From the IMG/VR virus record IMGVR_UViG_3300037725_000018, positions 159,358 through 223,357 of that record: a stretch of 64,000 nt of DNA; one strand, 5' to 3'. Position numbers and translations under genes: made by a program. Below are positions 1 to 16,764 of this stretch, piece by piece. Position 1 is the stretch's first letter; every line of letters starts with the position of its first letter. The notes under the pieces are model-generated. The model searched no databases and was not told the origin of the DNA. It worked only from the letters and a program-made list of their open reading frames with translations.

Positions 1-1
1 A

Positions 2-172
2 GAGAGGGGAATGATTCCCACGATCCAAGAATCCACGTCTTCGCGGGATCGGCGTTCGAAGATCACGGAAGCCACCAAAGAAATTGAGCCGCTTGTGACT
101 TCGGTTCTTGAAGAGTTTGGCCTTGACGACACGAAGGCAGCAAGCCGCTGGAGCAAGGCAGGGCTTTTCTAA
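2..172 (+). CDS. 3' end of hypothetical protein truncated by window start
   Basis: Frame 2 open from base 2 (ERGMIPTIQES...SKAGLF*) to TAA 170-172, followed by a terminator-like hairpin. Confidence 0.45.
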   Translation, partial: ERGMIPTIQESTSSRDRRSKITEATKEIEPLVTSVLEEFGLDDTKAASRWSKAGLF

Positions 173-190
173 AAGGCGTTCGCTTCAAAC

Positions 191-222
191 AAAGGGAAGG
201 GCAAAGGCCCCTTCCCTTTTTT
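191..222 (+). terminator. Intrinsic terminator-like hairpin
   Basis: AAAGGGAAGGG..CCCTTCCCTTT stem followed by T-run. Confidence 0.7.
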
Positions 223-251
223 TATTTGAAAGCGATATAGGTGGTACTGAC

Positions 252-431
252 ATGATTGTGCTTTACGAGTCTAGAAAAGAGTGGGGGGAAATCCGCGAAT
301 TTTCTGTTGGTCCCAACCCCACGATAGAGCTTCGGGGAGAAACGTGCTCGATTGAAAACTTAGGTGATAACATTACAACCGTCAAATTCAAAAAAATTAA
401 AATCAAGCGGGCCTTAAAAGAAATTTCATAA
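252..431 (+). CDS. Family A small protein
   Basis: 59 aa from internal ATG of track ORF 108..431; starts MIVLYES, basic C-terminal helix IKRALKEIS. Confidence 0.75.
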   Translation: MIVLYESRKEWGEIREFSVGPNPTIELRGETCSIENLGDNITTVKFKKIKIKRALKEIS

Positions 432-438
432 AAAAGTA

Positions 439-466
439 GGAACCGGGCTTTATTCTCCCTGTTAAA
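439..466 (+). promoter_or_regulatory. Class B ECF-like promoter for 515..796
   Basis: GGAAC-N17-GTTAAA, then AAAGAGGGAACCCTTTT 5' hairpin. Confidence 0.65.
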
Positions 467-514
467 GCAAACGGAAAAAGAGGGAACCCTTTTCACCAAC
501 GAACCCTGTTTGCT

Positions 515-796
515 ATGAACGCCACGAAAGAAGAGATCCGCGAAAAGTTTTCTCTTCCGTCTGACAGTCGGGCAAGGAAGCTTCGGGACATGTTTTCGAA
601 GCACGTCACGTATCTGGACAAGAGCCTAAACCGGGCTTGGAAGGGTCCGGTCGAAGCGGTTGTGCCGAAAGAGAAGGCTAAAGACATGCGGGAAGCAATG
701 AGCTTCATCGGTGCTCATGTGGATAAGACCGAAAGCCTTCCGGGTGGCCGCGTTCGGCTTTACAGCCGGGGCTACTACGTTCACGTTGGGGCTTAA
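515..796 (+). CDS. Hypothetical phage protein (class B cassette inserted in family A array)
   Basis: 93 aa ORF with own promoter, 5' hairpin and terminator. Confidence 0.75.
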   Translation: MNATKEEIREKFSLPSDSRARKLRDMFSKHVTYLDKSLNRAWKGPVEAVVPKEKAKDMREAMSFIGAHVDKTESLPGGRVRLYSRGYYVHVGA

Positions 797-829
797 ATGA
801 AGCGACAGCTTCCCATTCAAACCCGCAGG

Positions 830-863
830 AAGGCCCACAGGGGGAAACCTCTTGTGGGCCTTT
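830..863 (+). terminator. Intrinsic terminator-like hairpin
   Basis: AAGGCCCACAGGGGG-AAA-CCTCTTGTGGGCCTT after 515..796. Confidence 0.7.
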
Positions 864-953
864 GCCATACCCTTTTCGGTTCCGAAAACTTCTTAGAAAC
901 AATTGTGTGGACAGGCAATATCTACCAGTAGACAAAGAAAAATAACAAAGAAA

Positions 954-1175
954 ATGATTGCAGTTATAGTCTCGACGCCAAAAGACTACGGAGAAGCTTC
1001 AAAGCTTCGGATCTATCTTTCCGTTAATGACGTTTTTAAAGAAGGAAAAAAAGACTCCAAAGAAATTCAGGTTATTTCAACCCCAAATTTCACCCGAAAG
1101 CAAAACAACCAGATTGAAGAAAAGAGTTGGTTTAAAAATATAAGGTCTAAAAAAGAACAAGTAAAAAACCTTTAA
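954..1175 (+). CDS. Family A small protein
   Basis: 73 aa, MIAVIVS (internal ATG of track ORF 903..1175). Confidence 0.75.
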   Translation: MIAVIVSTPKDYGEASKLRIYLSVNDVFKEGKKDSKEIQVISTPNFTRKQNNQIEEKSWFKNIRSKKEQVKNL

Positions 1176-1179
1176 CGGC

Positions 1180-1332
1180 ATGATCATCATACTTAGCGAA
1201 ACAGAAGAAGAAGATTATAAAGTGGAAGAAGTATTTGAATATGGCCCCGCTTCTATGTCTTGGTATCTTACAGATGATGAAGTTTCGAGAGAAGAGATTA
1301 GACACATAAAAAAAGACCTAAAAACATGGTAG
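1180..1332 (+). CDS. Family A small protein
   Basis: 50 aa, MIIILSETEEE...IRHIKKDLKTW; below track cutoff, read by hand. Confidence 0.7.
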   Translation: MIIILSETEEEDYKVEEVFEYGPASMSWYLTDDEVSREEIRHIKKDLKTW

Positions 1333-1658
1333 TTTTCTTTGAATCAAAAACGGAATTTTCAAATGCGCTTTCGAACTCTACGTCCAAAAACACACTTCTT
1401 GATCTTTCGGTTCGCGTAAACGGTGTTAAGCTTTCGTACGCGGAACACGAAAAGACATACAAAAAACATGTAAGTCCCAAATCTTTAAAGTTAGCGCAGA
1501 AGCAGGGGACGGTATTTGGGCTTTCCGACGAAAAAAAGCGGCTTACTCTGTCCGGTGGAAAGCTTGTATACAATTCGGGTTCATTTGCACTTTCTTCTGC
1601 TTTGTTTTCAACGTTTAAGTCAATATCCGGCTCGCACAAAACTGGCAATATAATATAA
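1326..1658 (+). CDS. Family A small protein (VNG subfamily)
   Basis: 110 aa, MVVFFES...VRVNG. Confidence 0.75.
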   Translation: MVVFFESKTEFSNALSNSTSKNTLLDLSVRVNGVKLSYAEHEKTYKKHVSPKSLKLAQKQGTVFGLSDEKKRLTLSGGKLVYNSGSFALSSALFSTFKSISGSHKTGNII

Positions 1659-1674
1659 CACAAGTTGAAAACCC

Positions 1675-1845
1675 ATGATTATCGTTGTGTCTGAAAATGA
1701 AAGAGATCGAAGAAGTCTTGTTGGCTTTCCTCTTCACAACAAGGGAGGATGCAAGCACGTACTAAACACAAAGCAATCTAAAGCCGCAAACTTGAAAAAG
1801 TCTATCGTGGCTAGAATTGAAATTGTGAACTTGCACGGTTGGTAA
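1675..1845 (+). CDS. Family A small protein
   Basis: 56 aa, MIIVVSENE; read by hand. Confidence 0.7.
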   Translation: MIIVVSENERDRRSLVGFPLHNKGGCKHVLNTKQSKAANLKKSIVARIEIVNLHGW

Positions 1846-1851
1846 AAGAAG

Positions 1852-2031
1852 ATGATTTTCATAATGTACGAAACAAAAAAAGAGCAGAGGCGTTCTTACA
1901 TTAACGCAAATGGAGAAGGTTTTTGTTTTTTTGGTTGGGAGGGAATGAAACTTTTGCCGGAAACAAAACTTAAAAGAATTGTAATCGAAAGGTTCAGAGA
2001 AGCTAGAGTGAAAAATGGTCGTCATTTTTGA
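1852..2031 (+). CDS. Family A small protein
   Basis: 59 aa, MIFIMYETKKE; read by hand. Confidence 0.7.
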   Translation: MIFIMYETKKEQRRSYINANGEGFCFFGWEGMKLLPETKLKRIVIERFREARVKNGRHF

Positions 2032-2260
2032 AACAGAAAAAGAAGTCGTTGACGCAATTTCATATAAAAACGTTCCCGCAAAGTGGGAAGTCAACGGAAA
2101 ACCAGTAGAGGCAAAAGAGGTTATCGTAATGCCAAATAACCTAACAAAAAATCACTTTCCCGCCCACAAACAAATTGTGAAACGAAATCTTCACGAAAAG
2201 CAAGAAGACCTCTCGATTCTAAAAAAAGTTTGGTCGTTTGCAGCGTCAATCTTCAACTAA
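2015..2260 (+). CDS. Family A small protein (VNG subfamily)
   Basis: 81 aa, MVVIFETEKE...WEVNG. Confidence 0.8.
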   Translation: MVVIFETEKEVVDAISYKNVPAKWEVNGKPVEAKEVIVMPNNLTKNHFPAHKQIVKRNLHEKQEDLSILKKVWSFAASIFN

Positions 2261-2262
2261 AA

Positions 2263-2442
2263 ATGCCCATGCCCATAATCGTCGGAAAAAGAAAGGAGCT
2301 TAAAGAGGCTTACGTTATCCCAATGACACAAAGACAGTCCCGGACCTACAAATGGTTTAAGCATTCTGAAGTAAGAAATATGGGAACTAAGATGGTCAAG
2401 GAGTTAATCAGAGAAATATCATCTGAACTTAAAAGAAATTGA
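2263..2442 (+). CDS. Family A small protein (atypical start)
   Basis: 59 aa, MPMPIIVG...MVKELIREISSELKRN. Confidence 0.65.
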   Translation: MPMPIIVGKRKELKEAYVIPMTQRQSRTYKWFKHSEVRNMGTKMVKELIREISSELKRN

Positions 2443-2452
2443 AACCCAAGTT

Positions 2453-2638
2453 ATGTTCATTGTATTTGAAAGCGAAAAAGAGCGAAAAGAAGCTGTAAAC
2501 ACCGACAAATCATCGGTTCGTTCATTTTGGATTGAGGAAGAAATGATTTCAATTAAAAACGTCATGCGGGTTTACAGTTGGGACAACATGCGGCTCGGAA
2601 AGTCTCAGGCACGCAAAAAAGTAGCACATAGGCTTTAA
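2453..2638 (+). CDS. Family A small protein
   Basis: 61 aa, MFIVFESEKE. Confidence 0.8.
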   Translation: MFIVFESEKERKEAVNTDKSSVRSFWIEEEMISIKNVMRVYSWDNMRLGKSQARKKVAHRL

Positions 2639-2645
2639 TAAGGAT

Positions 2646-2831
2646 ATGCAAATTATATTCGAGACGTACCTAAAATTTCAAGCTCACTCCACGCCGGAGC
2701 TTAGTTTTTCCGGCTTCAAGGTCGGGGAAGCAAGAGACGTGCCTTCCCGTTGCATCCATGTTAAAAACACAGACACGATCCGGTCTATAAAAAAGCGGCT
2801 TCGAAAAGGGCTCGCGCAAGGCAAAAATTGA
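2646..2831 (+). CDS. Family A small protein
   Basis: 61 aa, MQIIFET...IRSIKKRLRKGL. Confidence 0.8.
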   Translation: MQIIFETYLKFQAHSTPELSFSGFKVGEARDVPSRCIHVKNTDTIRSIKKRLRKGLAQGKN

Positions 2832-2919
2832 CTTCCATATCGAGACCGGGTAGAGAAACGATTTCAAAAGACCTACCCCCCTTCAAATAACAAGTTCAAT
2901 TGACCCCCCCCCCTTAAGG

Positions 2920-3081
2920 ATGGTTTTGATTGCACATTCGCATAAAGAACTTCAAATTGCAGTTAGAATGTCACACGACCTTCTTCTTGTTCACGATTCG
3001 GTTTTCTTTCCCCGCTCTTCATACTGGATTCGAAACAAAGAAAATATGCATCGGTTCATAAAAAGTGATTTGAAAGTGTAA
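2920..3081 (+). CDS. Family A small protein
   Basis: 53 aa, MVLIAHSHKE...HRFIKSDLKV; read by hand. Confidence 0.65.
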   Translation: MVLIAHSHKELQIAVRMSHDLLLVHDSVFFPRSSYWIRNKENMHRFIKSDLKV

Positions 3082-3098
3082 AGATTAGTAGTAACATC

Positions 3099-3308
3099 AT
3101 GGTTGTTGTATATACAAAGAAAACATTAAGGAAGATAGAATCAAAGGTCGTGGAAAAGTTTTTAGAAGAAGATGAGGACGCTTTTATTATGCCAGTGGAG
3201 CTTCCGGTGTTGAACTACAAGACGCAGCGGAGCATTGTCCAAAACGCGATTCAGTCTACGTCGTGGGAAGAATACACAAACCCTGAAATGCGACCTCAAA
3301 ACATATGA
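3099..3308 (+). CDS. Family A small protein
   Basis: 69 aa, MVVVYTK. Confidence 0.75.
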   Translation: MVVVYTKKTLRKIESKVVEKFLEEDEDAFIMPVELPVLNYKTQRSIVQNAIQSTSWEEYTNPEMRPQNI

Positions 3309-3487
3309 TCATTATCCTTCCAGAAAACGAAAAAGAACACGGGGCAGCTCTTTGGCGTCGGTGGGACAAAAATCCCAAGATACTTGTCCTTCCATACCGA
3401 ATGTCAAGTTTTCAAGGAGAAGGTGGGGCAGCCGTTTTCGGGAGGGTAAGGTTTCACGTAAAAGACAAACTAAGTAAAAAAGCATGA
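3305..3487 (+). CDS. Family A small protein
   Basis: 60 aa, MIIILPENEKE; ATGA overlap with upstream gene. Confidence 0.8.
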   Translation: MIIILPENEKEHGAALWRRWDKNPKILVLPYRMSSFQGEGGAAVFGRVRFHVKDKLSKKA

Positions 3488-3678
3488 TGGTTTTGATCTT
3501 TCAAGATGAAGAGTAAAGAAGTAAGGTTCTTGAGCAGCCCGGAGCAACCTTTTTTTCAAAAGTCAAATGCCACGACAAGAACATTAGAATTAAAGAAACG
3601 TGTGAATTTCTTCAAGGCAGGCTAAGAAACTCTAAAAAGCTGTCTAAACTTTTGAGGCTAAAAATTAAAACGGCTTAA
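3484..3678 (+). pseudogene. Family A member with in-frame stop
   Basis: MMVLIFQDEE*RSKVLEQ...KLLRLKIKTA*; single TAA at 3514-3516, frame otherwise open to 3678. Confidence 0.65.
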
Positions 3679-3686
3679 TAGAAGAA

Positions 3687-3881
3687 ATGCAAATCATCTT
3701 CAACGACATAGACGAAATCAAATCGTGCATCGAAGAGTCAATATATGCCAACTCGAAAACGCGCACCCTTAGAGGAACAAATGTTTCCATAAACGTTTGG
3801 GACATGTGGCACACCGATTATGTGCGAGCTAATGGAGCAGAGGTTATAAAAAAAGTTAGATCCAAATTGAAAGAAGAATGA
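3687..3881 (+). CDS. Family A small protein
   Basis: 64 aa, MQIIFNDIDE...VIKKVRSKLKEE. Confidence 0.8.
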   Translation: MQIIFNDIDEIKSCIEESIYANSKTRTLRGTNVSINVWDMWHTDYVRANGAEVIKKVRSKLKEE

Positions 3882-4093
3882 TTATATACTTCGAACGTGG
3901 CGAAAAACAAAAAAGCCACCTGCGCGGCCTTTTTGGAAGGCAAAAGAAAACAGACCTTTCCTTCCACTTCGGAAAGATTGAAGACACAGACTGCTATTGG
4001 TATAACATTTCCGGAAACACAAAACGAAAAAGACCGGGTGAAGGTCTTAGAAGCAGAGAGCACTTAAAATTCATAACCGAAATTGCAATTTGA
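3878..4093 (+). CDS. Family A small protein
   Basis: 71 aa, MIIYFER; ATGA overlap. Confidence 0.8.
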   Translation: MIIYFERGEKQKSHLRGLFGRQKKTDLSFHFGKIEDTDCYWYNISGNTKRKRPGEGLRSREHLKFITEIAI

Positions 4094-4100
4094 AAACCCC

Positions 4101-4286
4101 ATGCATATACTTTTTGAGGACACACGCGAATTTAAAAAATACGACGGGACGTTTTATTACTTCAACGGTGGGCCGGAAATTTACGCGCATGAAGCAAGTG
4201 TTTTGACATACAGACGCAAAAAACTTACATTAGACAAACAAAAAAGAAAGCGCGTAAAAAAGAGGCTCAAAAAAAACATCGCATAA
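4101..4286 (+). CDS. Family A small protein
   Basis: 61 aa, MHILFEDTRE...RVKKRLKKNIA. Confidence 0.75.
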   Translation: MHILFEDTREFKKYDGTFYYFNGGPEIYAHEASVLTYRRKKLTLDKQKRKRVKKRLKKNIA

Positions 4287-4305
4287 CGGCGGCAGCAGGC
4301 AAAAA

Positions 4306-4491
4306 ATGGTTATTATAGTATCGGAAGAAAACACAAAACAAAAAACGTGGACGTTTTACGATAAAAATTTTTTTTCAGATCACAAGACGTGGTTTATCCC
4401 CACGGAGTCTTATGAAATAGAGCAAGGAGAAAGGTTCCCAAGCGTCCGGAGAAAAGCGAATACATCCCATATCATCAAGTCTCTTTCTTAA
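4306..4491 (+). CDS. Family A small protein
   Basis: 61 aa, MVIIVSEE. Confidence 0.8.
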   Translation: MVIIVSEENTKQKTWTFYDKNFFSDHKTWFIPTESYEIEQGERFPSVRRKANTSHIIKSLS

Positions 4492-4495
4492 ACCA

Positions 4496-4663
4496 GTGAT
4501 TATAGCAATTCCAGAATCCAAATTTGAGTGGCAAGTTTTCTATCAAGACTTACCTTTTAAAGATTTAAAAGTTGTCCCGGAACCCCGAATTTACGATAAC
4601 TACATAGAAATGTCAAGAAAAAGAACGGTTCTTTCGATAATAAAGGAACAAACAACTTCTTGA
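4496..4663 (+). CDS. Family A small protein (GTG start)
   Basis: 55 aa, MIIAIPES; read by hand. Confidence 0.65.
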   Translation: MIIAIPESKFEWQVFYQDLPFKDLKVVPEPRIYDNYIEMSRKRTVLSIIKEQTTS

Positions 4664-4665
4664 AA

Positions 4666-4725
4666 ATGATCATCACGATTCCAGCGGAGAATAATAAAGA
4701 AAGAGAAAAATGGGAATGCTTGTAA
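4666..4725 (+). pseudogene. Truncated family A stub
   Basis: 19 aa MIITIPAENNKEREKWECL*, overlapped by next member. Confidence 0.5.
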
Positions 4726-4892
4726 TCTTTGAAAATTTTGAAGAAATGGACAAAGTTTCAAAACCGAAGGGAAAGTACGAGCTTGTCGGGGAAGCAAAAG
4801 TCCCCGCGTTCAACGTCCACGTCAAAAGAAACTTCAAACGCCCAAGCGTGTTTAGAAGAGAAATGAAAATAGCTGTGTTCTCTAAGTTGTAA
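4716..4892 (+). CDS. Family A small protein
   Basis: 58 aa, MLVIFENFEE. Confidence 0.75.
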   Translation: MLVIFENFEEMDKVSKPKGKYELVGEAKVPAFNVHVKRNFKRPSVFRREMKIAVFSKL

Positions 4893-5431
4893 GAGCAAAA
4901 GCAATAAGACAGCCATCCCGACCACTTTTCCTTGGACATGATACAGACAAAGAGTATTACAACATCCGGTCACACAAACCCGAAAGCGGTTTATTAGTAG
5001 GTGGTTTGCATATAAACGGGGAAAAGCTTTCTAGCCATTGGATATATGTCAGGTGAGTGAATGGAAGAAAGCCCCACACAAGGCAAATAAAACCTCACGT
5101 GAGGTAAAATATGGTTTTTATATTGAGACCGGGGCGAAAACCATTTCATTTTTACCGGGGGTACCGATTATAGCAAGTTATTTTTACCCCCACCCCCCTG
5201 TAGAATGTACACAGCCTTGTAGTAGATGGTAGAATGTACATGTGAATTCAAAAAGCCGTTTCAAAACGAAATGCAAAAGCTTCAATTCAAGACAAAGCAC
5301 ATGTAGTTTTTACCGTTTGCAGTTTTGGCATGGAATTTGCCTTCTGCGTCAAAACAAGACGTGTAGCTTTTACAAGGGAGGTGGGCGTTGGCATACAGTT
5401 TGCTTTAAAAAACCATAAACAGATAATTGGC

Positions 5432-5593
5432 ATGATTGTTGTTATCGAAAGAAGAGAAGACATAAACGGCTCCAGCCTTAAATTTTTTGATTCTGAAATA
5501 AGGCTAAAAGTAGGCAGGGCAGTTGTTCGTAGGTGGTGCCCGTCTGGGTGGCCTTTACGATACAAAAGAGAGTACATCCGAAAGCATATTTGA
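5432..5593 (+). CDS. Family A small protein
   Basis: 53 aa, MIVVIER...REYIRKHI (internal ATG of 5330..5593). Confidence 0.7.
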   Translation: MIVVIERREDINGSSLKFFDSEIRLKVGRAVVRRWCPSGWPLRYKREYIRKHI

Positions 5594-5612
5594 AAACCAG
5601 TTGAAAAAAGAT

Positions 5613-5786
5613 ATGATCGTTATCCTTGTTGAAGAGAAGGCCAATTCTTTTAGCGTCGAAGACTTTGAAAAAGAAGTTGCAGTTATCCCAAGTGCAAAGG
5701 CGTACGTCTCTCTTTCGGTTCTTTCAAATGTTCAAGGGCTAAAGATGCGGAGGCGACATGTGGATAATGCCATTCGAAAGCTTTAA
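5613..5786 (+). CDS. Family A small protein
   Basis: 57 aa, MIVILVEE (internal ATG of 5523..5786). Confidence 0.7.
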   Translation: MIVILVEEKANSFSVEDFEKEVAVIPSAKAYVSLSVLSNVQGLKMRRRHVDNAIRKL

Positions 5787-5859
5787 TAGAAGCCTCTGTC
5801 TTTTCTTCTAAGAAGTTTTTCATGTGTGCCCTTGCGGTGGGATAGGCAAATAAAAAAAA

Positions 5860-5893
5860 CCCCACACAAGGCAAATTGGCGCCTCGCGTGGGG
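5860..5893. terminator. Repeated bidirectional terminator-like hairpin (CCCCACACAAGGC family)
   Basis: CCCCACACAAGGC..GCCTCGCGTGGGG at a convergent junction; same left arm at 5072 and 11510. Confidence 0.65.
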
Positions 5894-5920
5894 AATTGGG
5901 TGCCCGAATGTGGCCGACGT

Positions 5921-6166
5921 TTACAGATTCATCGCCATAGCCGAAGCCAAGTGCTTCAAGAAGTGATGGATATCTCCGTTTTTGAAATCAATCTTTCGAA
6001 TGATCCTTTCAATCCGTTTCCTCTCTTGTCCCCGCGTCTGTTTGATCTGTTCAATCACATTTGAAGCTTGGATGTAGTTGACGGTTCCGTTTTCAGACTC
6101 GACGGTGTAAGTGCGGGTAGTGTCAACGTCTGCTTCCTTGAAGTACGTCGTGATGAAGTCGTTCAT
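5921..6166 (-). CDS. Hypothetical phage protein (class B)
   Basis: 81 aa MNDFITTY...; start chosen downstream of promoter and leader. Confidence 0.75.
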   Translation of the reverse strand: MNDFITTYFKEADVDTTRTYTVESENGTVNYIQASNVIEQIKQTRGQERKRIERIIRKIDFKNGDIHHFLKHLASAMAMNL

Positions 6167-6219
6167 CGGCTTTTTGTTTTGTGAAAGAGTCTCCATTGTC
6201 ACGTCTAACAACACAATTA

Positions 6220-6247
6220 AAAAACGAGCGCCCCCCAAGGATGTTCC
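6220..6247 (-). promoter_or_regulatory. Class B promoter inside terminator hairpin (weak -10)
   Basis: GGAAC-N17-GTTTTT; hairpin nearly identical to the one at 6586-6630. Confidence 0.45.
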
Positions 6248-6270
6248 CAAGGGAGGCGCTCGTCTTGGTT

Positions 6271-6540
6271 TTACCAATCCCAACTGTCCCAATTGTTTTC
6301 GGTTTCAAAAACCACTTCTCCGTCTTCGACTCGCTGAATAATGTTTTTGTTATACAACGTGTACGTTCTCATTCGCCCGTCAGAATACTTCATGACAAGC
6401 GAGTGGTCGGAAGGAAGAGTCTTCGTCTCCCGGCCTTCATTTTTGGAAAAACGAAAGTAATGCTTTGCTTCTTCTTTCCGGTAAAACACATTCAAGTGTT
6501 CATCGGAGAGAACAAAAAACGGGGCTTCGTAATCAAACAT
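6271..6540 (-). CDS. Hypothetical phage protein (class B)
   Basis: 89 aa MFDYEAPF...WDSWDW. Confidence 0.75.
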   Translation of the reverse strand: MFDYEAPFFVLSDEHLNVFYRKEEAKHYFRFSKNEGRETKTLPSDHSLVMKYSDGRMRTYTLYNKNIIQRVEDGEVVFETENNWDSWDW

Positions 6541-6585
6541 GTTTCTGTTTGCTTTTATGAAGTTTCCTCTCTTTAAGCCAGTGCA

Positions 6586-6613
6586 ATAAACAAGCGCCCC
6601 CCAAGGGTGTTCC
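6586..6613 (-). promoter_or_regulatory. Class B ECF-like promoter
   Basis: GGAAC-N17-GTTTAT. Confidence 0.65.
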
Positions 6614-6656
6614 CAAGGAAGACGCTCGTTTTGGTTTTTCAATTGCAACTTCCTTT

Positions 6657-6827
6657 TTACGAAGGAAGTGGAACTTCCGTCACGTTGGGTTCGCCATAGT
6701 TTTCTTCTAGCTCTTCAATCGAATCGTACCCGGCGTCGTCTACGTAATACGCCAAAGCATCTTCTTTGCTTTCGGCGGCGTAGAGGCCCAACATGGTTCC
6801 GTTTGCGGAAATCTCAAATGCTTTCAT
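6657..6827 (-). CDS. Small acidic hypothetical protein (class B)
   Basis: 56 aa MKAFEISANG... Confidence 0.7.
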   Translation of the reverse strand: MKAFEISANGTMLGLYAAESKEDALAYYVDDAGYDSIEELEENYGEPNVTEVPLPS

Positions 6828-6867
6828 GAGCTTCGGTGGTTTTTGTTTTCTTTCCCTGTGCAACCTT

Positions 6868-6895
6868 GTAAACCCACAGCCTACGAGTATGTTTC
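6868..6895 (-). promoter_or_regulatory. Class B ECF-like promoter
   Basis: GAAAC-N17-GTTTAC, with a TTCA box 11 nt upstream. Confidence 0.6.
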
Positions 6896-7153
6896 ACGAA
6901 CGCACGTGAACGTTTCTTCCGGCCACGGGGGACCGGAGATTTCCCGAAGCTGCCTTCCGTCTTCATCAATCTCAAAGACTTCCACATCTTCGAGCTTCGC
7001 CTCTTCCCACGGGAACAGGTTTAGCTCCATGTGGGCTTGATTTCGAGCGTTGTCTACCGCCTTTTGTGGACTTGCACTTGACCGGGCATAGACAAACCCG
7101 TATCGGCCCGAGTCCTTGCCAGTTGCAACTGCCGATGCTTCGTAGGTAGCCAT
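6881..7153 (-). CDS. Hypothetical phage protein (class B)
   Basis: 90 aa acidic ORF with A/C-rich leader. Confidence 0.75.
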   Translation of the reverse strand: MATYEASAVATGKDSGRYGFVYARSSASPQKAVDNARNQAHMELNLFPWEEAKLEDVEVFEIDEDGRQLREISGPPWPEETFTCVRETYS

Positions 7154-7199
7154 TTGTTTCTTTTGTCTTTGTGAACAGGTTCTCTTTTCTAAGCCACTA

Positions 7200-7220
7200 C
7201 AACAACAACAACAACAACAA
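7200..7220. repeat. (CAA)7 microsatellite in promoter region
   Basis: Seven perfect CAA units. Confidence 0.9.
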
Positions 7221-7289
7221 ACAAAAGGGAAGGGGAACTGCTCCCCTTCCCGTGTGAAGATTTGTTTAACTAGTGAAACTTAGCTTCAG

Positions 7290-7484
7290 TTAAGAAGAAG
7301 ACTTAGGGTAGATGATTTCCGAACCAACAGTTCGGGCGTCTTCGTCTTCGTAGCGGTAGAGAACTTCCGCGTCTTCCCCAAGACGCTTTGCGTGGTTTAT
7401 AGCCTCTACCTCCGAAAGATAAAACGCGGTGTCCGGGCCGTAGTTTCCATCGGGGGAAACAAGGTATTCTTCTGAAATCGTCAT
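7290..7484 (-). CDS. Small acidic hypothetical protein
   Basis: 64 aa MTISEEYL... Confidence 0.7.
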   Translation of the reverse strand: MTISEEYLVSPDGNYGPDTAFYLSEVEAINHAKRLGEDAEVLYRYEDEDARTVGSEIIYPKSSS

Positions 7485-7537
7485 ATCGGTTTTTGTTGTT
7501 AACTGTCTGTCTTGAAGCTTTGAGTTTCCTGTTAACC

Positions 7538-7819
7538 TCACACACTTGCCCAATCGGGATCTTCCCCTTCACGGGTAATGTCTTCGGCAGAAAAGCTTCG
7601 GACCCGGTGAGGAAAGAAATACACCTTCATATTTTCCCCATCGATAGAAGCGACGTATCCACCACTTCCTTCGGTGGCCTTGTCAAGTTGACGCCGCACC
7701 TCGTAGGATTGGGGAGTGTCGTCAAACTCGACGGTAATGGTTCCTTCTTCCTCAAGCTGGTGCCAGAACTCTTCAGTTGCCGGGTGCGGGTCTTCAACGT
7801 GAACGTGAATGTTATCCAT
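7538..7819 (-). CDS. Acidic hypothetical protein (class B)
   Basis: 93 aa MDNIHVHVED... Confidence 0.75.
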   Translation of the reverse strand: MDNIHVHVEDPHPATEEFWHQLEEEGTITVEFDDTPQSYEVRRQLDKATEGSGGYVASIDGENMKVYFFPHRVRSFSAEDITREGEDPDWASV

Positions 7820-7870
7820 AGGGTTAAGTGTTTGGGATGTTGCGGATTGTCTGCCGAAAAATGCGTGTGC

Positions 7871-7898
7871 TTAAAAAGGTGTTGGAAGATGAAGTTCC
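7871..7898 (-). promoter_or_regulatory. Class B ECF-like promoter
   Basis: GGAAC-N17-TTTTAA preceded by four TTCAC boxes (7898-7933). Confidence 0.6.
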
Positions 7899-8166
7899 GT
7901 GAAGCTTGTGTGAAGTGTGAATACTCTGTGAAGAGGGAACACTTTGTTGGTTTGAAGGTTTAAGTTAGTGCAGGGGGAGGAATATCTTTTTTTGCGTAAG
8001 TAGATTCTGTGAAGTGGAATGAATATTGCTTCGGTAGCAAATTCCATTCCAACCCTTCCGGCAGGTGTTCATTCAATATTGATTTATGTTTCCTGTAGAG
8101 ACTCAAGTAAACTTATTTTAGCCCCCAACCCTCTTAGACGCCGTTGAACGGGCTTTGGGCTTTTAT

Positions 8167-8192
8167 TTGAATATTGAATATTGAATATTGAA
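8167..8192. repeat. TTGAATA tandem heptamer repeat
   Basis: ttgaata x3 plus ttgaa in a gene-free interval. Confidence 0.85.
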
Positions 8193-8596
8193 CGCCAAGT
8201 GCCAACCAACCTGCCTTCAGCGGCTACAGACGTAGATTCTATGTTTCTCGCTCGGGGTTTGGTAAACTTATTTATTGTTGGAACGGGTTTTGCTACCGTA
8301 GACATACAATAACACATCAAATACTATGCCACACCCCAAGGCACATAGATCGCCTCTAAGCGGTTTAAGTGTTTGTAGGTATGTGGGGCAAGGCCATGTG
8401 GCGAAATCCACGCACACACGCGCACGTGCGCCCGTGAGGCTTGTCTTGATGTTAGCGGTGCAACGCTGTCCCCGCGTCTTTTGACACACGCTCCCTTGTG
8501 AGCTTAGGGACCTAAGTATGAGAAAAGATGCGGGGACGCTTTTCACGTGTCCCCGTTGACAGACGCCGAAGTTTTTTGATACACATTTGCCGGGTG

Positions 8597-8625
8597 GGAA
8601 CAAACTTATAGTTTCCCCCGTTTTA
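8597..8625 (+). promoter_or_regulatory. Candidate promoter for family A array 2
   Basis: GGAAC-N18-GTTTTA within a hairpin, 13 nt before ATG 8639. Confidence 0.45.
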
Positions 8626-8638
8626 GCGCCAAAAAAAG

Positions 8639-8812
8639 ATGATCGTCGTTATAGACAAAAAAGAAAGAGAAGACTTCGCTGCAACCAAGTTTCACAAGTT
8701 CGTAAACGTCCCTCCGGGTATGAGAAAAGACGTGGGGTGTCTTCATAACTTAGAAGACGGGTCCGGGCACCTTCTTCGGTTTGCAAAAGTTTTAGTCAAG
8801 TCTTACTTGTGA
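8639..8812 (+). CDS. Family A small protein
   Basis: 57 aa, MIVVIDKKERE; read by hand. Confidence 0.7.
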   Translation: MIVVIDKKEREDFAATKFHKFVNVPPGMRKDVGCLHNLEDGSGHLLRFAKVLVKSYL

Positions 8813-8886
8813 AAGAAAAAGCTGACGTGCGTGGTCCCCGTATACAATTTTTATTAGCCAATGCCAATGTCAATTTTTATCCGTTT

Positions 8887-9099
8887 ATGGTTGTTCTTAT
8901 TGAAACAAAAACAGAAGACGAAGAGTTTTACAATTACGTGTCCGGGATGCGGGTTTTGGTTTTGGGGACTTTTGAAACGGTCCCTTTATATCGAATACCG
9001 GATTTTGAAATTTTTAAGGTAGCCAAAACTGAAGGCTTCTGTGTAAAGGAGAATGGTCGGCTCACAATTCTTCATCACGGAATAGCAAAAGTGAGGTAA
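8887..9099 (+). CDS. Family A small protein, paralog of 9105..9308
   Basis: 70 aa, MVVLIET; shares FET..LY...F.....K.EG....E.GRL. Confidence 0.8.
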   Translation: MVVLIETKTEDEEFYNYVSGMRVLVLGTFETVPLYRIPDFEIFKVAKTEGFCVKENGRLTILHHGIAKVR

Positions 9100-9104
9100 A
9101 AAAG

Positions 9105-9308
9105 ATGGTTCTTGTTTTCGAAGACGAAACAGAAAAAGAAAGGTTTGACAAACAGGTGTCCGAAACGGGCGTGGGAGTGTTTGGCCTTTTTGAAACCCTT
9201 TCTTTGTATAAAGAAAAAGCATTTAAGGTTCTTCGGTTTGCCAAAAGAGAAGGGCTAATTACAAGAGAAGACGGGCGTCTCATTTTAGTTTACTATGGAG
9301 TAGAGTAA
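9105..9308 (+). CDS. Family A small protein
   Basis: 67 aa, MVLVFEDETE. Confidence 0.8.
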   Translation: MVLVFEDETEKERFDKQVSETGVGVFGLFETLSLYKEKAFKVLRFAKREGLITREDGRLILVYYGVE

Positions 9309-9324
9309 AACGTAGGGAAAAAAG

Positions 9325-9549
9325 ATGGTTATTCTTGTTGAAAACAAAAGAGAAAAAACCCCTTTGAAAAAAGCGTGTGGGGGAAGAGTTGAAGACGAAT
9401 TTGAACTTTTAAAAGAGCGGATTCTGTTGCACGCGGGGCACTCGTCTCCGATGGATTTTCTAGTGTACATCAAAAAAAGGCTCCACTCTTGCCCAAGCAC
9501 CGGAAGACTTACCTGCGACATAACGCCAATACGTAACAACAAAAAATAA
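9325..9549 (+). CDS. Family A small protein
   Basis: 74 aa, MVILVEN. Confidence 0.75.
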   Translation: MVILVENKREKTPLKKACGGRVEDEFELLKERILLHAGHSSPMDFLVYIKKRLHSCPSTGRLTCDITPIRNNKK

Positions 9550-9558
9550 CAGACAGTT

Positions 9559-9756
9559 GTGGTTGTTATCATTGAAGACTCGAAACTTGTTTCAGAAATT
9601 CAAGACTACTTCTCCGTCTGTTTAGAGGAAAATCTTGATGTGTATGAGCAGGTTTGGCTTTGCCGTGTGGATAGCAGCAAGCCGGAATATTTGCGTTTTA
9701 TGAAAAAACGCGGATTTGACAGGATAGAAGAGAACAAAAGAATGATTTTTAAGTAA
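9559..9756 (+). CDS. Family A small protein (GTG start)
   Basis: 65 aa, MVVIIEDS. Confidence 0.75.
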   Translation: MVVIIEDSKLVSEIQDYFSVCLEENLDVYEQVWLCRVDSSKPEYLRFMKKRGFDRIEENKRMIFK

Positions 9757-9808
9757 GCATACGCAAGGGAAAAATTAGCTCCTTCATCAAAACTGCGTAA
9801 AGTGTGCA

Positions 9809-9994
9809 ATGATTGTTTTCGTTGTTGAAAGCACAGAAGGCAAGTCCGCGTTTTTTGATTTGACAAACAAAAACCGGAAAAACTTTGGAAGCGGCGTAAG
9901 CGTGGTTTTCTCTCATAAGTACGTCGGCTCCGGAACGGCCCGAGAATGCGCTTTGAAAGTCAAACAAAAGATCAAAAAATCCAAGCAAAAGTAA
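9809..9994 (+). CDS. Family A small protein
   Basis: 61 aa, MIVFVVESTE. Confidence 0.8.
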   Translation: MIVFVVESTEGKSAFFDLTNKNRKNFGSGVSVVFSHKYVGSGTARECALKVKQKIKKSKQK

Positions 9995-10000
9995 TGAGCC

Positions 10001-10186
10001 GTGGTTATCCTAATAGAAAGCAAAAAAGAGGAAAAAGAGCTTAATAACTTAGTGAGGAGTTCTGGTTTTGAACTTGACTTTCTTGAAAGACTTCCTGCCT
10101 TTTGGCACGTGCCGGAACTTTTGCTGCGTGACCTGAAAACGGTAGGTTTTAAAACAGAACAAAGGCGATTAAAATTTAATCGGTAG
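10001..10186 (+). CDS. Family A small protein (GTG start)
   Basis: 61 aa, MVILIESKKE. Confidence 0.8.
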   Translation: MVILIESKKEEKELNNLVRSSGFELDFLERLPAFWHVPELLLRDLKTVGFKTEQRRLKFNR

Positions 10187-10201
10187 TAACCGAATCAGCT
10201 A

Positions 10202-10396
10202 ATGATTGTCATTTTGAAAAACATACAGGAGGGCAGGCATTTAGAAAATGTTAAGGGGGTGGGTCCCAAAAGAGAAGAGGTCGTATACGAATATAGATAT
10301 GGGCCACGCCTGCGGGTTCAAATCCTAAGAGATTGCAGAAAAGGGGCAAAAGAAGGTGGGGAGCGGCTGAAAATTCCGGGCCGAATACGTCAGTAA
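10202..10396 (+). CDS. Family A small protein, paralog of 10413..10613
   Basis: 64 aa, MIVILKN; shares R...L.D.R.G.K..G.RLK.P. Confidence 0.8.
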   Translation: MIVILKNIQEGRHLENVKGVGPKREEVVYEYRYGPRLRVQILRDCRKGAKEGGERLKIPGRIRQ

Positions 10397-10412
10397 AAAC
10401 AGATATGTAAAT

Positions 10413-10613
10413 ATGATCGTCATTGCAAATAACTTAAATGAAGACCGTTGGATAGTGGGACACCCGAATATCGAAAGAAAAGAAATTGCCTACGTTTACG
10501 TGTGGACACGGGAAGAGAGGACCCGTCTTTTAAAAGACTTCAGGCGGGGGATAAAAAAGAGTGGCAAAAGGCTAAAAATGCCCGATCACATGGAAACAAG
10601 TAAAAAATGGTAA
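10413..10613 (+). CDS. Family A small protein
   Basis: 66 aa, MIVIANN. Confidence 0.8.
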   Translation: MIVIANNLNEDRWIVGHPNIERKEIAYVYVWTREERTRLLKDFRRGIKKSGKRLKMPDHMETSKKW

Positions 10614-10624
10614 AAACGCTTCCC

Positions 10625-10816
10625 ATGATATTCATCTTCAAAGAGTTTGAGTACTCAAACAACATTGACTTCTTTAAAGAGACGATTATTTCAAGCGACG
10701 GGTTGGTAAAGTCCGGTTCTGTCGTTGCCGATTCTCCCGGAACAATCCCTCTAACAAAGAGTTCATACAAAAAAATCAAAGAATACGTCAAAACCCGGTT
10801 GTCAAACAAACAGTGA
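10625..10816 (+). CDS. Family A small protein
   Basis: 63 aa, MIFIFKE...KKIKEYVKTRL. Confidence 0.75.
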   Translation: MIFIFKEFEYSNNIDFFKETIISSDGLVKSGSVVADSPGTIPLTKSSYKKIKEYVKTRLSNKQ

Positions 10817-10998
10817 TCATCATCGAAGAAAACATGTTTGAACAGAAGCTAACGTTTCCCATTCGGCTTGCCCCCGAAGAACGAGTAAGCCGAAAAGACG
10901 CTTTCTTAAACGGGTGTATCTCTGCGCTTACTTTGCATAACCCAAGTGAAGGCTGGACGAAAAGGCGGCTTTGTTTAATCACCGAACGTTACCAATAA
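10813..10998 (+). CDS. Family A small protein (GTG start)
   Basis: 61 aa, MIIIEEN; GTGA overlap. Confidence 0.7.
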   Translation: MIIIEENMFEQKLTFPIRLAPEERVSRKDAFLNGCISALTLHNPSEGWTKRRLCLITERYQ

Positions 10999-11017
10999 CG
11001 AAACCCTTTGAAAAGAT

Positions 11018-11215
11018 ATGGTCGTTTGCTTTGAAAACGAAAATGAACTTGTTTCCAATACAACGATTCTTTTCGGGCGCAAGTCCGTAAACGGAATCAT
11101 TCTTGACCCTGAAGAAATTTGTATAGTCAAAAGACCGGATAATATCCATGCCCAAGTTGAAAAAAGCTTTTCGACCTGTCGCCTCACCTGTTTTGTAAAA
11201 AGTTCACGCACATAA
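11018..11215 (+). CDS. Family A small protein (VNG subfamily)
   Basis: 65 aa, MVVCFENENE...SVNG. Confidence 0.8.
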   Translation: MVVCFENENELVSNTTILFGRKSVNGIILDPEEICIVKRPDNIHAQVEKSFSTCRLTCFVKSSRT

Positions 11216-11226
11216 AAACCGGACTC

Positions 11227-11427
11227 ATGGTTGTCTATTTTGAAAAAAGAACGGAGTTTCTAAACCATTCACAATTCACAAATCGATTTCGAACAACAAT
11301 AACCGTTAACGGGCAGGTTCTTGTCAATTGCGAATATATCGTCTCGCCCAATAAAAAAGCGCCCCTTCAAATAAAAGAAAAGGACGTTCCTTTGTATCCG
11401 GGAACGCGCCTTGTTTTCGTTTTTTAA
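11227..11427 (+). CDS. Family A small protein (VNG subfamily)
   Basis: 66 aa, MVVYFEKRTE...TVNG. Confidence 0.8.
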   Translation: MVVYFEKRTEFLNHSQFTNRFRTTITVNGQVLVNCEYIVSPNKKAPLQIKEKDVPLYPGTRLVFVF

Positions 11428-11509
11428 ACGCTTGCCCAAAGCTTTGCAGAAGGCGCAAGACGGGTTTTCGGCTTTCGGTCTTTAAGGTACCCTTTACATA
11501 CAGAGAAAA

Positions 11510-11543
11510 CCCCACACAAGGCGTCCATTTGCCTCATGTGGGG
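11510..11543. terminator. Repeated bidirectional terminator-like hairpin (CCCCACACAAGGC family)
   Basis: CCCCACACAAGGC..GCCTCATGTGGGG at a convergent junction. Confidence 0.7.
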
Positions 11544-11571
11544 CCTCTTTTGTTTATGTGTTGGGGGGGGA

Positions 11572-12051: not shown

Positions 12052-12103
12052 CGTCTCTTTTGTTTGTTTGTTGGAAAGGACTTCCCTCTCTGTTTCGTGT
12101 GCT

Positions 12104-12131
12104 TAAAATAGAAAAGCCCGTGGACAGTTCC
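12104..12131 (-). promoter_or_regulatory. Class B ECF-like promoter in hairpin
   Basis: GGAAC-N17-ATTTTA; upstream TTAAC..CTTCAC box. Confidence 0.65.
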
Positions 12132-12167
12132 ACGGGCCGTGTGAAGCGTTTGTTAACAAGTGATTTT

Positions 12168-12428: not shown

Positions 12429-12461
12429 GGGCTTTTGGTTTTGGTTTGTGAAAATTCGGCT

Positions 12462-12671: not shown

Positions 12672-12724
12672 TTTTCAAGCCTTGTTTTATCGTTTGAAAA
12701 CGACCTCCCCTTTCTTGCGTGTAT

Positions 12725-16752: not shown

Positions 16753-16764
16753 TTTTTTGCTTAT

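What the first reader, a model, noticed from the sequence alone, without database searches (positions are those of the whole stretch)
252..5786. Array 1: 23 family A units in 5.5 kb, translationally coupled
Seen: 21 intact and 2 broken members lie head-to-tail with spacers mostly under 30 nt or ATGA/short overlaps (1326, 2015, 3305, 3484, 3878). Upstream contexts are A-rich, with no obvious Shine-Dalgarno. Six members fall below the ORF-track cutoff and were found only through the motif. One unrelated self-contained cassette (439-863) interrupts the array. Inference: a polycistronic expansion locus where units are added and lost.
Basis: partly seen in the sequence, partly recalled or inferred. 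Interest (0 to 1): 0.78.

Follow-up and report, generated by a model that had tools for sequence, protein, structure and literature searches.

The report
Expanding small-gene array in T4-like phage
A 223-kb T4-like phage from tidal-flat sediment carries a 5.5-kb run of 21 working and 2 broken genes for ~60-residue proteins that share little beyond a hydrophobic N-terminal tag. Related phage strains have gained, lost and rewritten individual units, but what the proteins do is still unknown.

Summary
Window 252-5786 holds 21 intact and 2 broken + strand ORFs of 50-110 aa. They start M-(I/V)-(I/V)-(I/V/L)-(F/I/L/V)-E..E and are packed with overlaps or short spacers, with one unrelated conserved gene at 515-796.

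They are real genes. Against an ~83% identical co-occurring strain, dN/dS is 0.22-0.24 in frame and 0.88-1.04 in shifted frames.

Unit content varies. One unit is killed by a nonsense codon, and a ~340-nt deletion left a 19-aa stub. The sister strain has four extra units. A more distant relative, with flanks 64-99% identical, shares only 7 of ~31 units at 30-49% identity. Recognisable paralogs lie next to each other, so units arise by tandem duplication and then diverge beyond recognition.

Beyond the first ~12 residues the members share only size and a basic C-terminus. No Pfam, PHROG, PDB or fold match exists, and 1.84 billion representatives gave no relative outside this lineage.

The missing Shine-Dalgarno is genome-wide, not special to the array.

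Transcription could not be tested. Two conserved noncoding elements suggest more than one transcription unit.

My best reading is a fast-turnover accessory family of host-interaction or anti-defence proteins. Its function is inferred, not shown.

The parts
191..219 (+). G+C-rich hairpin followed by a T run, ending the upstream + strand genes just before unit 1
   Evidence: Terminator-like site in the scan. Upstream genes read.
252..431 (+). u01, 59 aa, leader MIVLYE
   Evidence: Its own cluster is the top hit of the profile search.
515..796 (+).
   Evidence: 95% aa identity and dN/dS 0.07 against variant B. Orthologs at 77% and 59% identity head the arrays of more distant relatives. No Pfam, PHROG or PDB match. 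AF2 pLDDT 72, with weak resemblance to a LAGLIDADG/WhiA-type domain.
954..1175 (+). u02, 73 aa, leader MIAVIV
   Evidence: dN/dS 0.26
1180..1332 (+). u03, 50 aa
   Evidence: dN/dS 0.16
1326..1658 (+). u04, 110 aa; overlaps u03 by 7 nt
   Evidence: 0.27
1675..1845 (+). u05, 56 aa
   Evidence: 0.23
1852..2031 (+). u06, 59 aa
   Evidence: 0.45
2015..2260 (+). u07, 81 aa; overlaps u06 by 17 nt
   Evidence: 0.25. AF2 model pLDDT 75, pTM 0.34.
2263..2442 (+). u08, 59 aa, atypical start MPMPIIV
   Evidence: Weak ortholog in variant C.
2453..2638 (+). u09, 61 aa
   Evidence: 0.15. 39% identical ortholog in variant C.
2646..2831 (+). u10, 61 aa
   Evidence: 0.16. Ortholog in C. Paralog of u20.
2832..2919 (+). 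Conserved noncoding element 1 (GAGACC..CAAGTT..C-tract). It ends in a length-variable C10 tract at 2904-2913, 6 nt before the u11 start codon.
   Evidence: 80% identical in variant C, where the flanking proteins are only 30-49% identical. The tract is C10 here, C11 in L008 and C12 in run X2, and is interrupted in B and C. It is the only C or G run of 9 or more in the genome.
2920..3081 (+). u11, 53 aa
   Evidence: 0.25
3099..3308 (+). u12, 69 aa
   Evidence: 0.16
3305..3487 (+). u13, 60 aa; ATGA overlap with u12
   Evidence: 0.27. Ortholog in C.
3484..3678 (+). u14, broken unit: TAA at codon 11 (3514-3516), remainder in frame
   Evidence: Intact 64-aa ortholog in variant B. Found by the family profile with one stop inside.
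3687..3881 (+). u15, 64 aa
   Evidence: 0.26
3878..4093 (+). u16, 71 aa; ATGA overlap with u15
   Evidence: 0.09. 42% identical ortholog in C.
4101..4286 (+). u17, 61 aa
   Evidence: 0.25. 49% identical ortholog in C.
4306..4491 (+). u18, 61 aa
   Evidence: 0.18
4496..4663 (+). u19, 55 aa, GTG start conserved in variant B
4666..4725 (+). Broken unit: a 19-aa stub that keeps the leader MIITIP of a 58-aa unit intact in variant B
   Evidence: A ~340-nt deletion removed that unit's body and the next 68-aa unit. The joint 4644>4741, with 449 letters between, is seen in the contigs of runs X6 and X7.
4716..4892 (+). u20, 58 aa (60 aa from the ATG at 4710)
   Evidence: 0.11. Ortholog in C.
4893..5431 (+). 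Noncoding region. It holds a hairpin at 5072-5104, element 2 (5125-5198, a paralog of element 1) and nested inverted repeats at 5200-5377.
   Evidence: No family remnant. Divergence from B is 0.095 against dS 0.55. RNA fold z -5.8 on + and -3.6 on -, with no compensatory changes. Part of it is conserved in C. Variant B has an extra 64-aa unit at its 5' side.
5432..5593 (+). u22, 53 aa. Variant B carries two tandem copies, 49% identical to each other.
5613..5786 (+). u23, 57 aa, the last unit
   Evidence: 0.42
5860..5893 (-). Hairpin plus T run (read on the - strand), where the array converges with the - strand block 5921-8317
   Evidence: The same stem motif recurs at 5072 and 11510.

Best explanation
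Array 1 is the largest cluster of a lineage-specific multigene family in a T4-like jumbo phage. The family has roughly 45-50 members in the genome. Each unit encodes a ~50-80-residue, mostly basic protein. Its N-terminus is a conserved hydrophobic strand plus an acidic turn (M-I/V-I/V-I/V/L-F/I/L/V-E-x3-E). The rest of the protein is free to change.

Shown: the units are translated genes under purifying selection. New units arise by tandem duplication. Copies diverge so fast that only neighbours are still recognisable as relatives. Units are removed by deletion or nonsense mutation, so even co-occurring strains differ in repertoire.

Inferred: the genes are expressed as a few compact polycistronic messages from the accessory + strand island. 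In T4-type phages such islands typically hold early genes. The proteins would act on host or defence targets, with the conserved N-terminal module as a common structural or docking piece and the variable, basic remainder giving specificity. Arms-race turnover would explain the birth-and-death pattern.
For: Coding: dN/dS is 0.24 over 1156 codons, and below 0.5 for all 18 orthologous pairs. It is 0.22 in frame against 0.88 and 1.04 in shifted frames. Motif codons vary synonymously.

Family: 26 strict-motif ORFs against 0.4 in shuffles. The leader logo from 72 members has I/V at positions 2-3 in 57-59 of 72 and E at position 10 in 34 of 72. 28 of 37 members have pI above 8, with the charge in the C-terminal third.

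Birth by tandem duplication: body similarity with z above 4, after the first 12 residues are removed, is found in 5 of 61 adjacent pairs against 4 of 587 non-adjacent pairs (Fisher p = 6e-4). Variant B has u22 in two tandem copies and a paralog of u19 beside it.

Loss: a nonsense codon in u14 and a deletion stub at 4666. Both strains coexist in the same runs, and joints sit at these places.

Turnover: variant C has flanking genes 64-99% identical, but only 7 of ~31 units are detectable, at 30-49% identity.

Phage type and context: the phage has a gp23-type capsid protein and a gp21-type protease. The array lies in one of the few + strand islands, among ORFan genes.

Precedent: T4 amplifies a small counter-defence gene by recombination and loses accessory genes by deletion (PMC9391042).
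Against: No function is shown. There is no homolog with a known role, and no confident fold: AF2 pTM is 0.34, ESM pLDDT is about 0.4, and the dimer prediction gave no answer. No transcript data were available, so 'early' and 'polycistronic' are inferences from layout.

Common ancestry of all members is not proven. Only 9 of 21 units are recognised by a leave-one-out profile at E below 0.03, and body similarity is near background for most pairs. A moderate dN/dS of 0.24 does not itself show positive selection.
Confidence: 0.55

Rival explanations
1. [quoted passage not shown] On this reading, otherwise unrelated small basic proteins are loaded into the prohead, trimmed by the gp21-type protease after h-x-E, and injected with the DNA as a varied anti-defence payload.
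For: The phage has a gp21-type protease. T4 gp21 cuts after L/I-x-E. The T4 leader is 10 residues long, and T-even internal proteins are diverse, often basic, and share only that leader (PMC9026906; PMC3012670). Family A has hydrophobic-x-E at residues 4-6 in many members and unrelated, basic bodies.
Against: The head module of the same genome holds at least 8 proteins with a different shared leader, (K/R)KL(K/R)RIIREE. That leader ends in I-x-E and sits beside the protease, scaffold and capsid genes, so it is the better candidate for this phage's targeting sequence. Only 22 of 72 members have E at position 6. No large protein carries the family A leader. Adjacent paralogs show whole-gene duplication rather than leader shuffling. 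There is no resemblance to the T4 leader sequence itself.
Confidence: 0.12
2. The units are not homologous. The N-terminal pattern would be convergent, imposed on every tightly packed cistron by translation initiation without a Shine-Dalgarno (an unstructured start region) or by some other N-terminal rule for small proteins in this host.
For: No gene in this genome uses a Shine-Dalgarno. Bodies are mostly unrelated.
Against: Long genes start differently (MA.., MS.., MK..). Motif codons include ATC, GTC, GTG and CTT, so A/U richness is not what is conserved. The pattern is position-specific at the protein level. Related T4-like phages of Bacteroidota hosts lack such ORFs, with one each in Flavobacterium phage immuto and RM378, close to the 0.2 strict-motif hits their shuffled sequences give. 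Duplicates of intermediate age (30-50% identity) link the members.
Confidence: 0.08
3. The units encode nothing of use. They would be decaying duplicates or selfish filler tolerated in a plastic region of a large genome.
For: Two units are broken in this genome. Repertoires differ freely between strains. Predicted folds are poor.
Against: Purifying selection acts on every orthologous pair tested. 21 of 23 frames are open despite dS of about 0.5. The GTG start of u19 is conserved. Headful-packaged T4-type genomes pay for extra DNA, as shown by the deletions that compensate for amplification in T4 (PMC9391042).
Confidence: 0.07

Closest known systems
Hyperplastic (plastic periphery) regions of T4-type phage genomes, which hold clusters of small ORFan early genes
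   Same: The host genome is a T4-like phage. The region is a block of small, tightly packed, overlapping ORFs between conserved modules, with no database matches, and it varies between close relatives. The concept is as summarised in PMC2147016.
   Different: Here the ORFs are not a mixed bag. Dozens of them carry one N-terminal signature, and several are demonstrably tandem duplicates. No per-gene promoter/stem-loop cassettes are seen, only two conserved noncoding elements per array.
Gene 'accordion' amplification of a counter-defence gene: T4 tifA (eLife 2022, PMC9391042)
   Same: A small accessory gene in a T4-type phage is multiplied in tandem by recombination, and accessory DNA is lost by deletion. 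Here adjacent paralogs and unit-sized deletions are observed.
   Different: Accordion copies are near-identical and transient. Here the closest paralogs are 30-50% identical and most are unrecognisable, so this is an old, diversified, maintained family. No counter-defence activity has been shown.
T-even internal proteins that share only a capsid targeting sequence (IPI, IPII, IPIII and their polymorphic replacements)
   Same: A T4-type phage carries a set of diverse, often basic small proteins whose only common feature is a ~10-residue N-terminal leader. The loci are polymorphic between strains (PMC3012670; PMC9026906).
   Different: The leader sequence is different: a hydrophobic beta-type run rather than MKTYQEFIAE. 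There are tens of members rather than three. They lie in accessory operons. A separate and more convincing leader family exists in this phage's head module.
Multigene families of large eukaryotic DNA viruses (for example the tandem, variable-copy families at poxvirus or asfarvirus genome ends); from general knowledge, not tested here
   Same: Tandem paralog arrays show birth-and-death dynamics and strain-to-strain copy differences, and are thought to serve host interaction.
   Different: Those proteins are larger and keep recognisable domains. They occur in a different virus realm and genome architecture. No homology to family A.

Membership tests
Any curated protein family (Pfam-A, PHROGs) or solved structure | A significant profile or fold match | tested here: not met
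   Nothing in Pfam or PHROGs better than E = 0.0055, and nothing reaches a Pfam curated cut-off. The family profile found no PDB sequence at E up to 1. Foldseek against the PDB gave a best E of 6.5. Atlas look-alikes scored below 0.8.
T4-type capsid-targeted internal proteins | The phage encodes a gp21-type prohead protease | tested here: met
   PF03420 match of 107 bits at genome 32450-32959.
T4-type capsid-targeted internal proteins | An N-terminal leader of about 10 residues ending in the protease motif L/I-x-E | tested here: inconclusive
   Hydrophobic-x-E at residues 4-6 in part of the family (E at position 6 in 22 of 72; E at position 10 in 34 of 72). The cleavage motif of this phage's own protease is unknown.
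T4-type capsid-targeted internal proteins | Being the phage's leader-bearing set associated with head genes | tested here: not met
   A different leader family, ending IREE, occupies the head module. Family A lies in accessory + strand islands.
T4-type capsid-targeted internal proteins | Presence in the virion and proteolytic removal of the leader | not testable with these tools
   This needs virion mass spectrometry, and no isolate exists.
Hyperplastic-region accessory gene cluster of T4-type phages | Small ORFs between conserved modules whose content differs between related phages | tested here: met
   Flanks are conserved at 64-99%, while unit content differs between variants A, B and C. 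The family is absent from the immuto, RM378, Mel-JY01 and LR756508 genomes.
Recent gene accordion (segmental amplification) | Near-identical tandem copies | tested here: not met
   The best paralog pairs are 31-49% identical. No direct DNA repeats of unit length were found.
Tandemly duplicated multigene family (birth and death) | Paralogs cluster as neighbours, with copy gain and loss between strains | tested here: met
   13-fold enrichment of body similarity among adjacent pairs. Extra, missing and broken units between strains.
Single polycistronic operon with translational coupling | One transcript spans all units | not testable with these tools
   No RNA run was listed. The spacing is compatible, but conserved internal noncoding elements suggest several units.
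Integron-like cassette array | A recombination site after each cassette and an adjacent integrase | tested here: not met
   Most spacers are 2-19 nt and carry no repeated site. The conserved element occurs only twice per array.

The most novel reading that the evidence does not exclude
The conserved N-terminal module is a functional address tag, for a common docking partner or for loading and delivery. The arrays would then be a phage-borne, continuously re-diversified library of several dozen small effectors aimed at host defences. The two conserved noncoding elements, one ending in a hypermutable poly-C tract 6 nt before a start codon, would switch parts of the library on or off.
Probability: 0.15. 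Interest if true: 0.85.

Novelty: new variant of a known kind. Interest (0 to 1): 0.6.

Why it matters
Phage accessory regions are usually described as collections of unrelated ORFans. Here one family has been multiplied to roughly 45-50 copies in one genome, and its turnover can be read directly from strains sharing a sediment sample. The data show duplication, divergence past recognition, nonsense decay and unit-sized deletion. That makes it a natural system for studying how new small phage proteins are born and how quickly they lose detectable homology. This bears on the origin of viral ORFans. If the proteins turn out to be counter-defence or host-takeover factors, the arrays would be a rich source of small inhibitors from phages of hosts that, on the inference made in this report, are Bacteroidota.

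Tried and rejected
- DNA search of GenBank phages with the first 8 kb found no match.
- Rfam on 1-19000 gave only one sub-threshold hit outside the array.
- tRNA scan found nothing in the array.
- The exhaustive profile search of 1.84 billion representatives returned only the lineage's own proteins.
- The AF2 model of u07 was only moderately confident and had no structural neighbour.
- ESM Atlas features gave PAS-like look-alikes below the level that shuffled proteins reach, so I rejected them.
- The homodimer prediction gave no answer and is not used as evidence.
- The T4 late-promoter motif TATAAATA is not enriched in this genome, so it cannot be used to time expression.
- The sigma-70-type scan gave 16 promoter-like sites against a shuffle mean of 9.6 (sd 3.4), about 2 sd above, on both strands and all consensus matches only, so I did not use it.
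- A search for a second broken unit inside 4893-5431 found no remnant there. The second broken unit is the stub at 4666.
- A viral-contig scan with the 93-aa gene found nothing. Relatives came from the protein database instead.
- A consensus RNA structure for the two short noncoding elements was not found. The long fold of 5063-5431 has no compensatory changes.
- The LAGLIDADG/WhiA-like resemblance of the 93-aa protein is weak (E about 0.01, TM about 0.5) and no LAGLIDADG motif is evident, so it is kept only as a lead.

Full report
**Where the window lies.** The window is the last 64 kb (159358-223357) of a 223,357-bp virus record that CheckV rates complete. The phage is T4-like. It has a gp23-type major capsid protein (PF07068, 223 bits) and a gp21-type prohead protease (PF03420, 107 bits). 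It also has T4-like tail-fibre tips, thymidylate synthase, DHFR and an endolysin. Its capsid protein is closest to an uncultured 484-kb phage (66%), Microcystis phage Mel-JY01 (52%), the Flavobacterium 'immuto' phages (48%) and Rhodothermus phage RM378 (38%). The DNA occurs in tidal-flat metagenomes. Only 2 of 86 long genes have a Shine-Dalgarno core, and upstream regions are 47% A. I read this as pointing to a Bacteroidota-type host; that is an inference from general knowledge. Most genes are on the - strand. The array sits in one of the few + strand islands.

**Checking the observation.** The ORF list and translations confirm 21 intact + strand ORFs of 50-110 aa between 252 and 5786. All start with Met followed by four hydrophobic, mostly beta-branched residues, then an acidic stretch. 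The overlaps are at 1326, 2015, 3305, 3484 and 3878, and most other gaps are 2-19 nt.

There are two broken members:
- Unit 14 (3484-3678) carries TAA at codon 11 and is otherwise in frame. Its ortholog in a sister strain is an intact 64-aa gene.
- At 4666-4725 a 19-aa stub keeps the leader of a 58-aa unit. A ~340-nt deletion has removed that unit's body together with the following 68-aa unit.

The motif is not chance. A strict pattern finds 26 ORFs of 40-120 aa in the genome against 0.4 in shuffles. Codons at the motif vary synonymously (ATT/ATC/ATA, GTT/GTC/GTG, GAA/GAG), so the constraint is on the protein. The A-rich, SD-less upstream context is real but is a property of the whole genome.

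**Are they genes?** Protein searches recovered contigs from the same tidal-flat samples:
- One is 99.985% identical to the window (L008).
- A set, 'variant B' (L002-L007), is collinear and about 83% identical.

Eighteen orthologous pairs give dN 0.124, dS 0.511 and dN/dS 0.24, with every pair below 0.5. As a control, the same nucleotides read in the two other frames give 0.88 and 1.04 against 0.22 in frame. The GTG start of u19 is conserved. These are protein-coding genes under purifying selection.

**Is it one family?** Similarity between members is very weak. Pairwise hits are marginal. A leave-one-out profile recognises 9 of 21 units at E below 0.03 and misses 6. After the first 12 residues are removed, similarity is near background except for a few pairs (b02/b03, b06/b07, u10/u20). 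What is shared is:
- the leader, summarised from 72 members;
- the size;
- a basic C-terminal third: 28 of 37 members have pI above 8;
- by eye, a mid-protein h-x-h-h-P strand in many members.

Recognisable body similarity is concentrated in neighbours: 5 of 61 adjacent pairs against 4 of 587 non-adjacent pairs (Fisher p = 6e-4). Intermediate-age duplicates at 31-49% identity sit side by side. I take this as evidence that units arise by tandem duplication and diverge rapidly, so the family is most simply monophyletic. That conclusion is inferred, not proven.

**Gain and loss between strains.** Compared with the window, variant B differs in four ways:
- it has unit 14 intact;
- it has two extra units between u19 and u20, one of them a paralog of u19;
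- it has an extra 64-aa unit at the 5' side of the 4893-5431 gap;
- it has u22 as two tandem copies.

Contigs of four public runs show both variants coexisting, for example about 285x against about 60x in one run and the reverse dominance in another. Joints lie exactly at these places. Array 2 (8639-11427) shows the same behaviour, since unit b07 is absent from the sister strain.

A more distant relative, variant C (L049, another sample), has flanking genes 64-99% identical: IF-1 99%, SprT-like 84%, DnaJ-like 64%. Its array holds about 31 leader-bearing units. Only 7 have a detectable ortholog in the window, at 30-49% identity, with u13 and u16 in swapped order.

**The interrupting gene.** ORF 515-796 (93 aa) is not a family member, but it is the best-conserved gene of the locus. 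It is 95% identical to variant B with dN/dS 0.07, 77% to C, and 59% to a fourth lineage D. It lies inside or at the head of the small-gene array in every relative. It has no sequence match. The AF2 model (pLDDT 72) is an alpha-beta-beta-alpha-beta-beta domain with weak resemblance to LAGLIDADG/WhiA domains (E about 0.01, TM about 0.5). I treat that only as a lead.

**Transcription.** No RNA run was listed, so the polycistronic claim is untested. The layout supports compact operons: a terminator-like hairpin precedes u01 (191-219), and a convergent terminator follows u23 (5860-5893).

The two largest spacers are not junk. The 88-nt spacer 2832-2919 and part of 4893-5431 share a ~75-nt element (GAGACC..CAAGTT..CCCCNCCCC). 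This element occurs only at these two places in the genome and is about 80% conserved in variant C, where the neighbouring proteins are barely recognisable. Region 5063-5431 differs from variant B by 0.095 substitutions per site against dS 0.55 in the flanking genes. It folds more stably than shuffles (z -5.8), though without compensatory changes. These are probably regulatory sites, so I expect two or three transcription units rather than one.

**What the proteins might do.** Nothing known matches:
- Pfam and PHROGs gave nothing.
- PDB sequences gave nothing.
- Foldseek gave nothing.
- The ESM Atlas gave nothing useful.
- A profile search of 1.84 billion representatives returned only the lineage's own proteins.
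- The family is absent from the nearest sequenced phages.

Structure predictions are weak. AF2 on u07 gives pLDDT 75 and pTM 0.34, with helix 8-19, a hairpin at 24-31 and a C-terminal helix. The dimer job gave no answer.

I considered the T4 internal-protein model seriously. T4 gp21 cuts after L/I-x-E. The internal proteins of T-even phages are diverse, often basic, polymorphic, and share only a 10-residue capsid targeting leader. However, the head module of this genome contains at least eight proteins with a different common leader, (K/R)KL(K/R)RIIREE. That leader ends in I-x-E and sits next to the protease, scaffold and capsid genes. It is the more credible targeting sequence. Family A lies in accessory islands and duplicates as whole genes. 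I therefore rank the packaging-leader idea as a minority rival.

The reading I commit to is a rapidly turning-over accessory family. It is probably expressed early, and it probably acts on host or defence targets. The N-terminal strand and acidic turn would be the conserved structural or docking module, and the rest would be the variable surface. The nearest experimental precedent for the dynamics is the recombination-driven amplification of the counter-defence gene tifA, and the compensating deletions, in T4.

**Verdict.** The family is new and lineage-restricted. The kind of locus, a plastic accessory region with tandem expansion, is known. The scale of the expansion, the leader-only conservation and the directly observable birth-and-death process are unusual. 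Interest 0.6.

Noticed in passing
Own genome outside the window: G000 about 27.4-39.9 kb, - strand (starts at 39825, 39103, 34437, 33337, 30937, 28923, 28588, 27784): At least eight head-module proteins of 88-186 aa share the N-terminal leader (K/R)KL(K/R)R(I/M)IREE, which ends in the T4 protease motif I-x-E. They lie between the portal/terminase, the gp21-like protease, the acidic scaffold and the capsid gene. This looks like the phage's own capsid-targeting leader family.
   Followed up: partly
window 2904-2913: This is the only C or G homopolymer of 9 or more in the 223-kb genome. It sits 6 nt before the u11 start codon and differs in length between near-identical genomes: C10 here, C11 in L008, C12 in the major contig of run X2. 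It is interrupted by A in variants B and C. It could be a hypermutable switch or a sequencing/assembly artefact.
   Followed up: partly
window 2842-2913 and 5125-5198: Two paralogous ~75-nt noncoding elements (GAGACC..CAAGTT..CCCCNCCCC) occur nowhere else in the genome. They are about 80% conserved in variant C although the surrounding genes have diverged almost beyond recognition. No consensus RNA structure was found, so a DNA-level regulatory site is likely.
   Followed up: partly
window 5063-5431: This noncoding stretch evolves about six times more slowly than synonymous sites of its neighbours (0.095 against 0.55). It has nested inverted repeats (GTAGAATGTACA twice, pairing with TGTAGnTTTTAC twice) and a stable predicted fold (z -5.8). 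No compensatory changes are seen among the five sequences available.
   Followed up: partly
L051 (Logan SRR18572993 contig), 4226-9289: A fourth lineage has an ortholog of the 93-aa gene (59% identity). It is followed by a dozen or so small ORFs of a different repeated type, which share an N-terminal xKExxYL motif, and by none of family A. The locus downstream of that gene may be a general hotspot for small-gene expansions.
   Followed up: no
window 8639-11427 and 15548-17367; genome 17.6-23 kb (L014): Further arrays of the same family. Array 2 has 13 units, three of them with non-ATG starts at 9559, 10001 and 10813, and one unit (b07) is missing in the sister strain. Six more units lie at 15548-17367. 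Others lie in the second + strand island next to a GIY-YIG homing endonuclease gene, and a few scattered ones lie on the - strand.
   Followed up: partly
window 5072-5104, 5860-5893, 11510-11543: Three hairpins share the stem sequence CCCCACACAAGGC. Two sit at convergent ends of + and - strand blocks and look like terminators. The third lies inside the array's large noncoding gap.
   Followed up: partly
L013 (genome 146000-160000), upstream of the window: The phage encodes homologs of translation initiation factor IF-1 (99% identical between variants A and C), a DnaJ-like chaperone, a MoxR/CbbQ-type AAA protein, an SprT-like peptidase and a cell-wall hydrolase, just upstream of the array. Variant C additionally has a RadC-like gene there.
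   Followed up: no
window 6219-6272 and 6585-6638: A 54-nt direct repeat (89% identity), each copy forming a hairpin, follows two successive small - strand genes downstream of the array.
   Followed up: no
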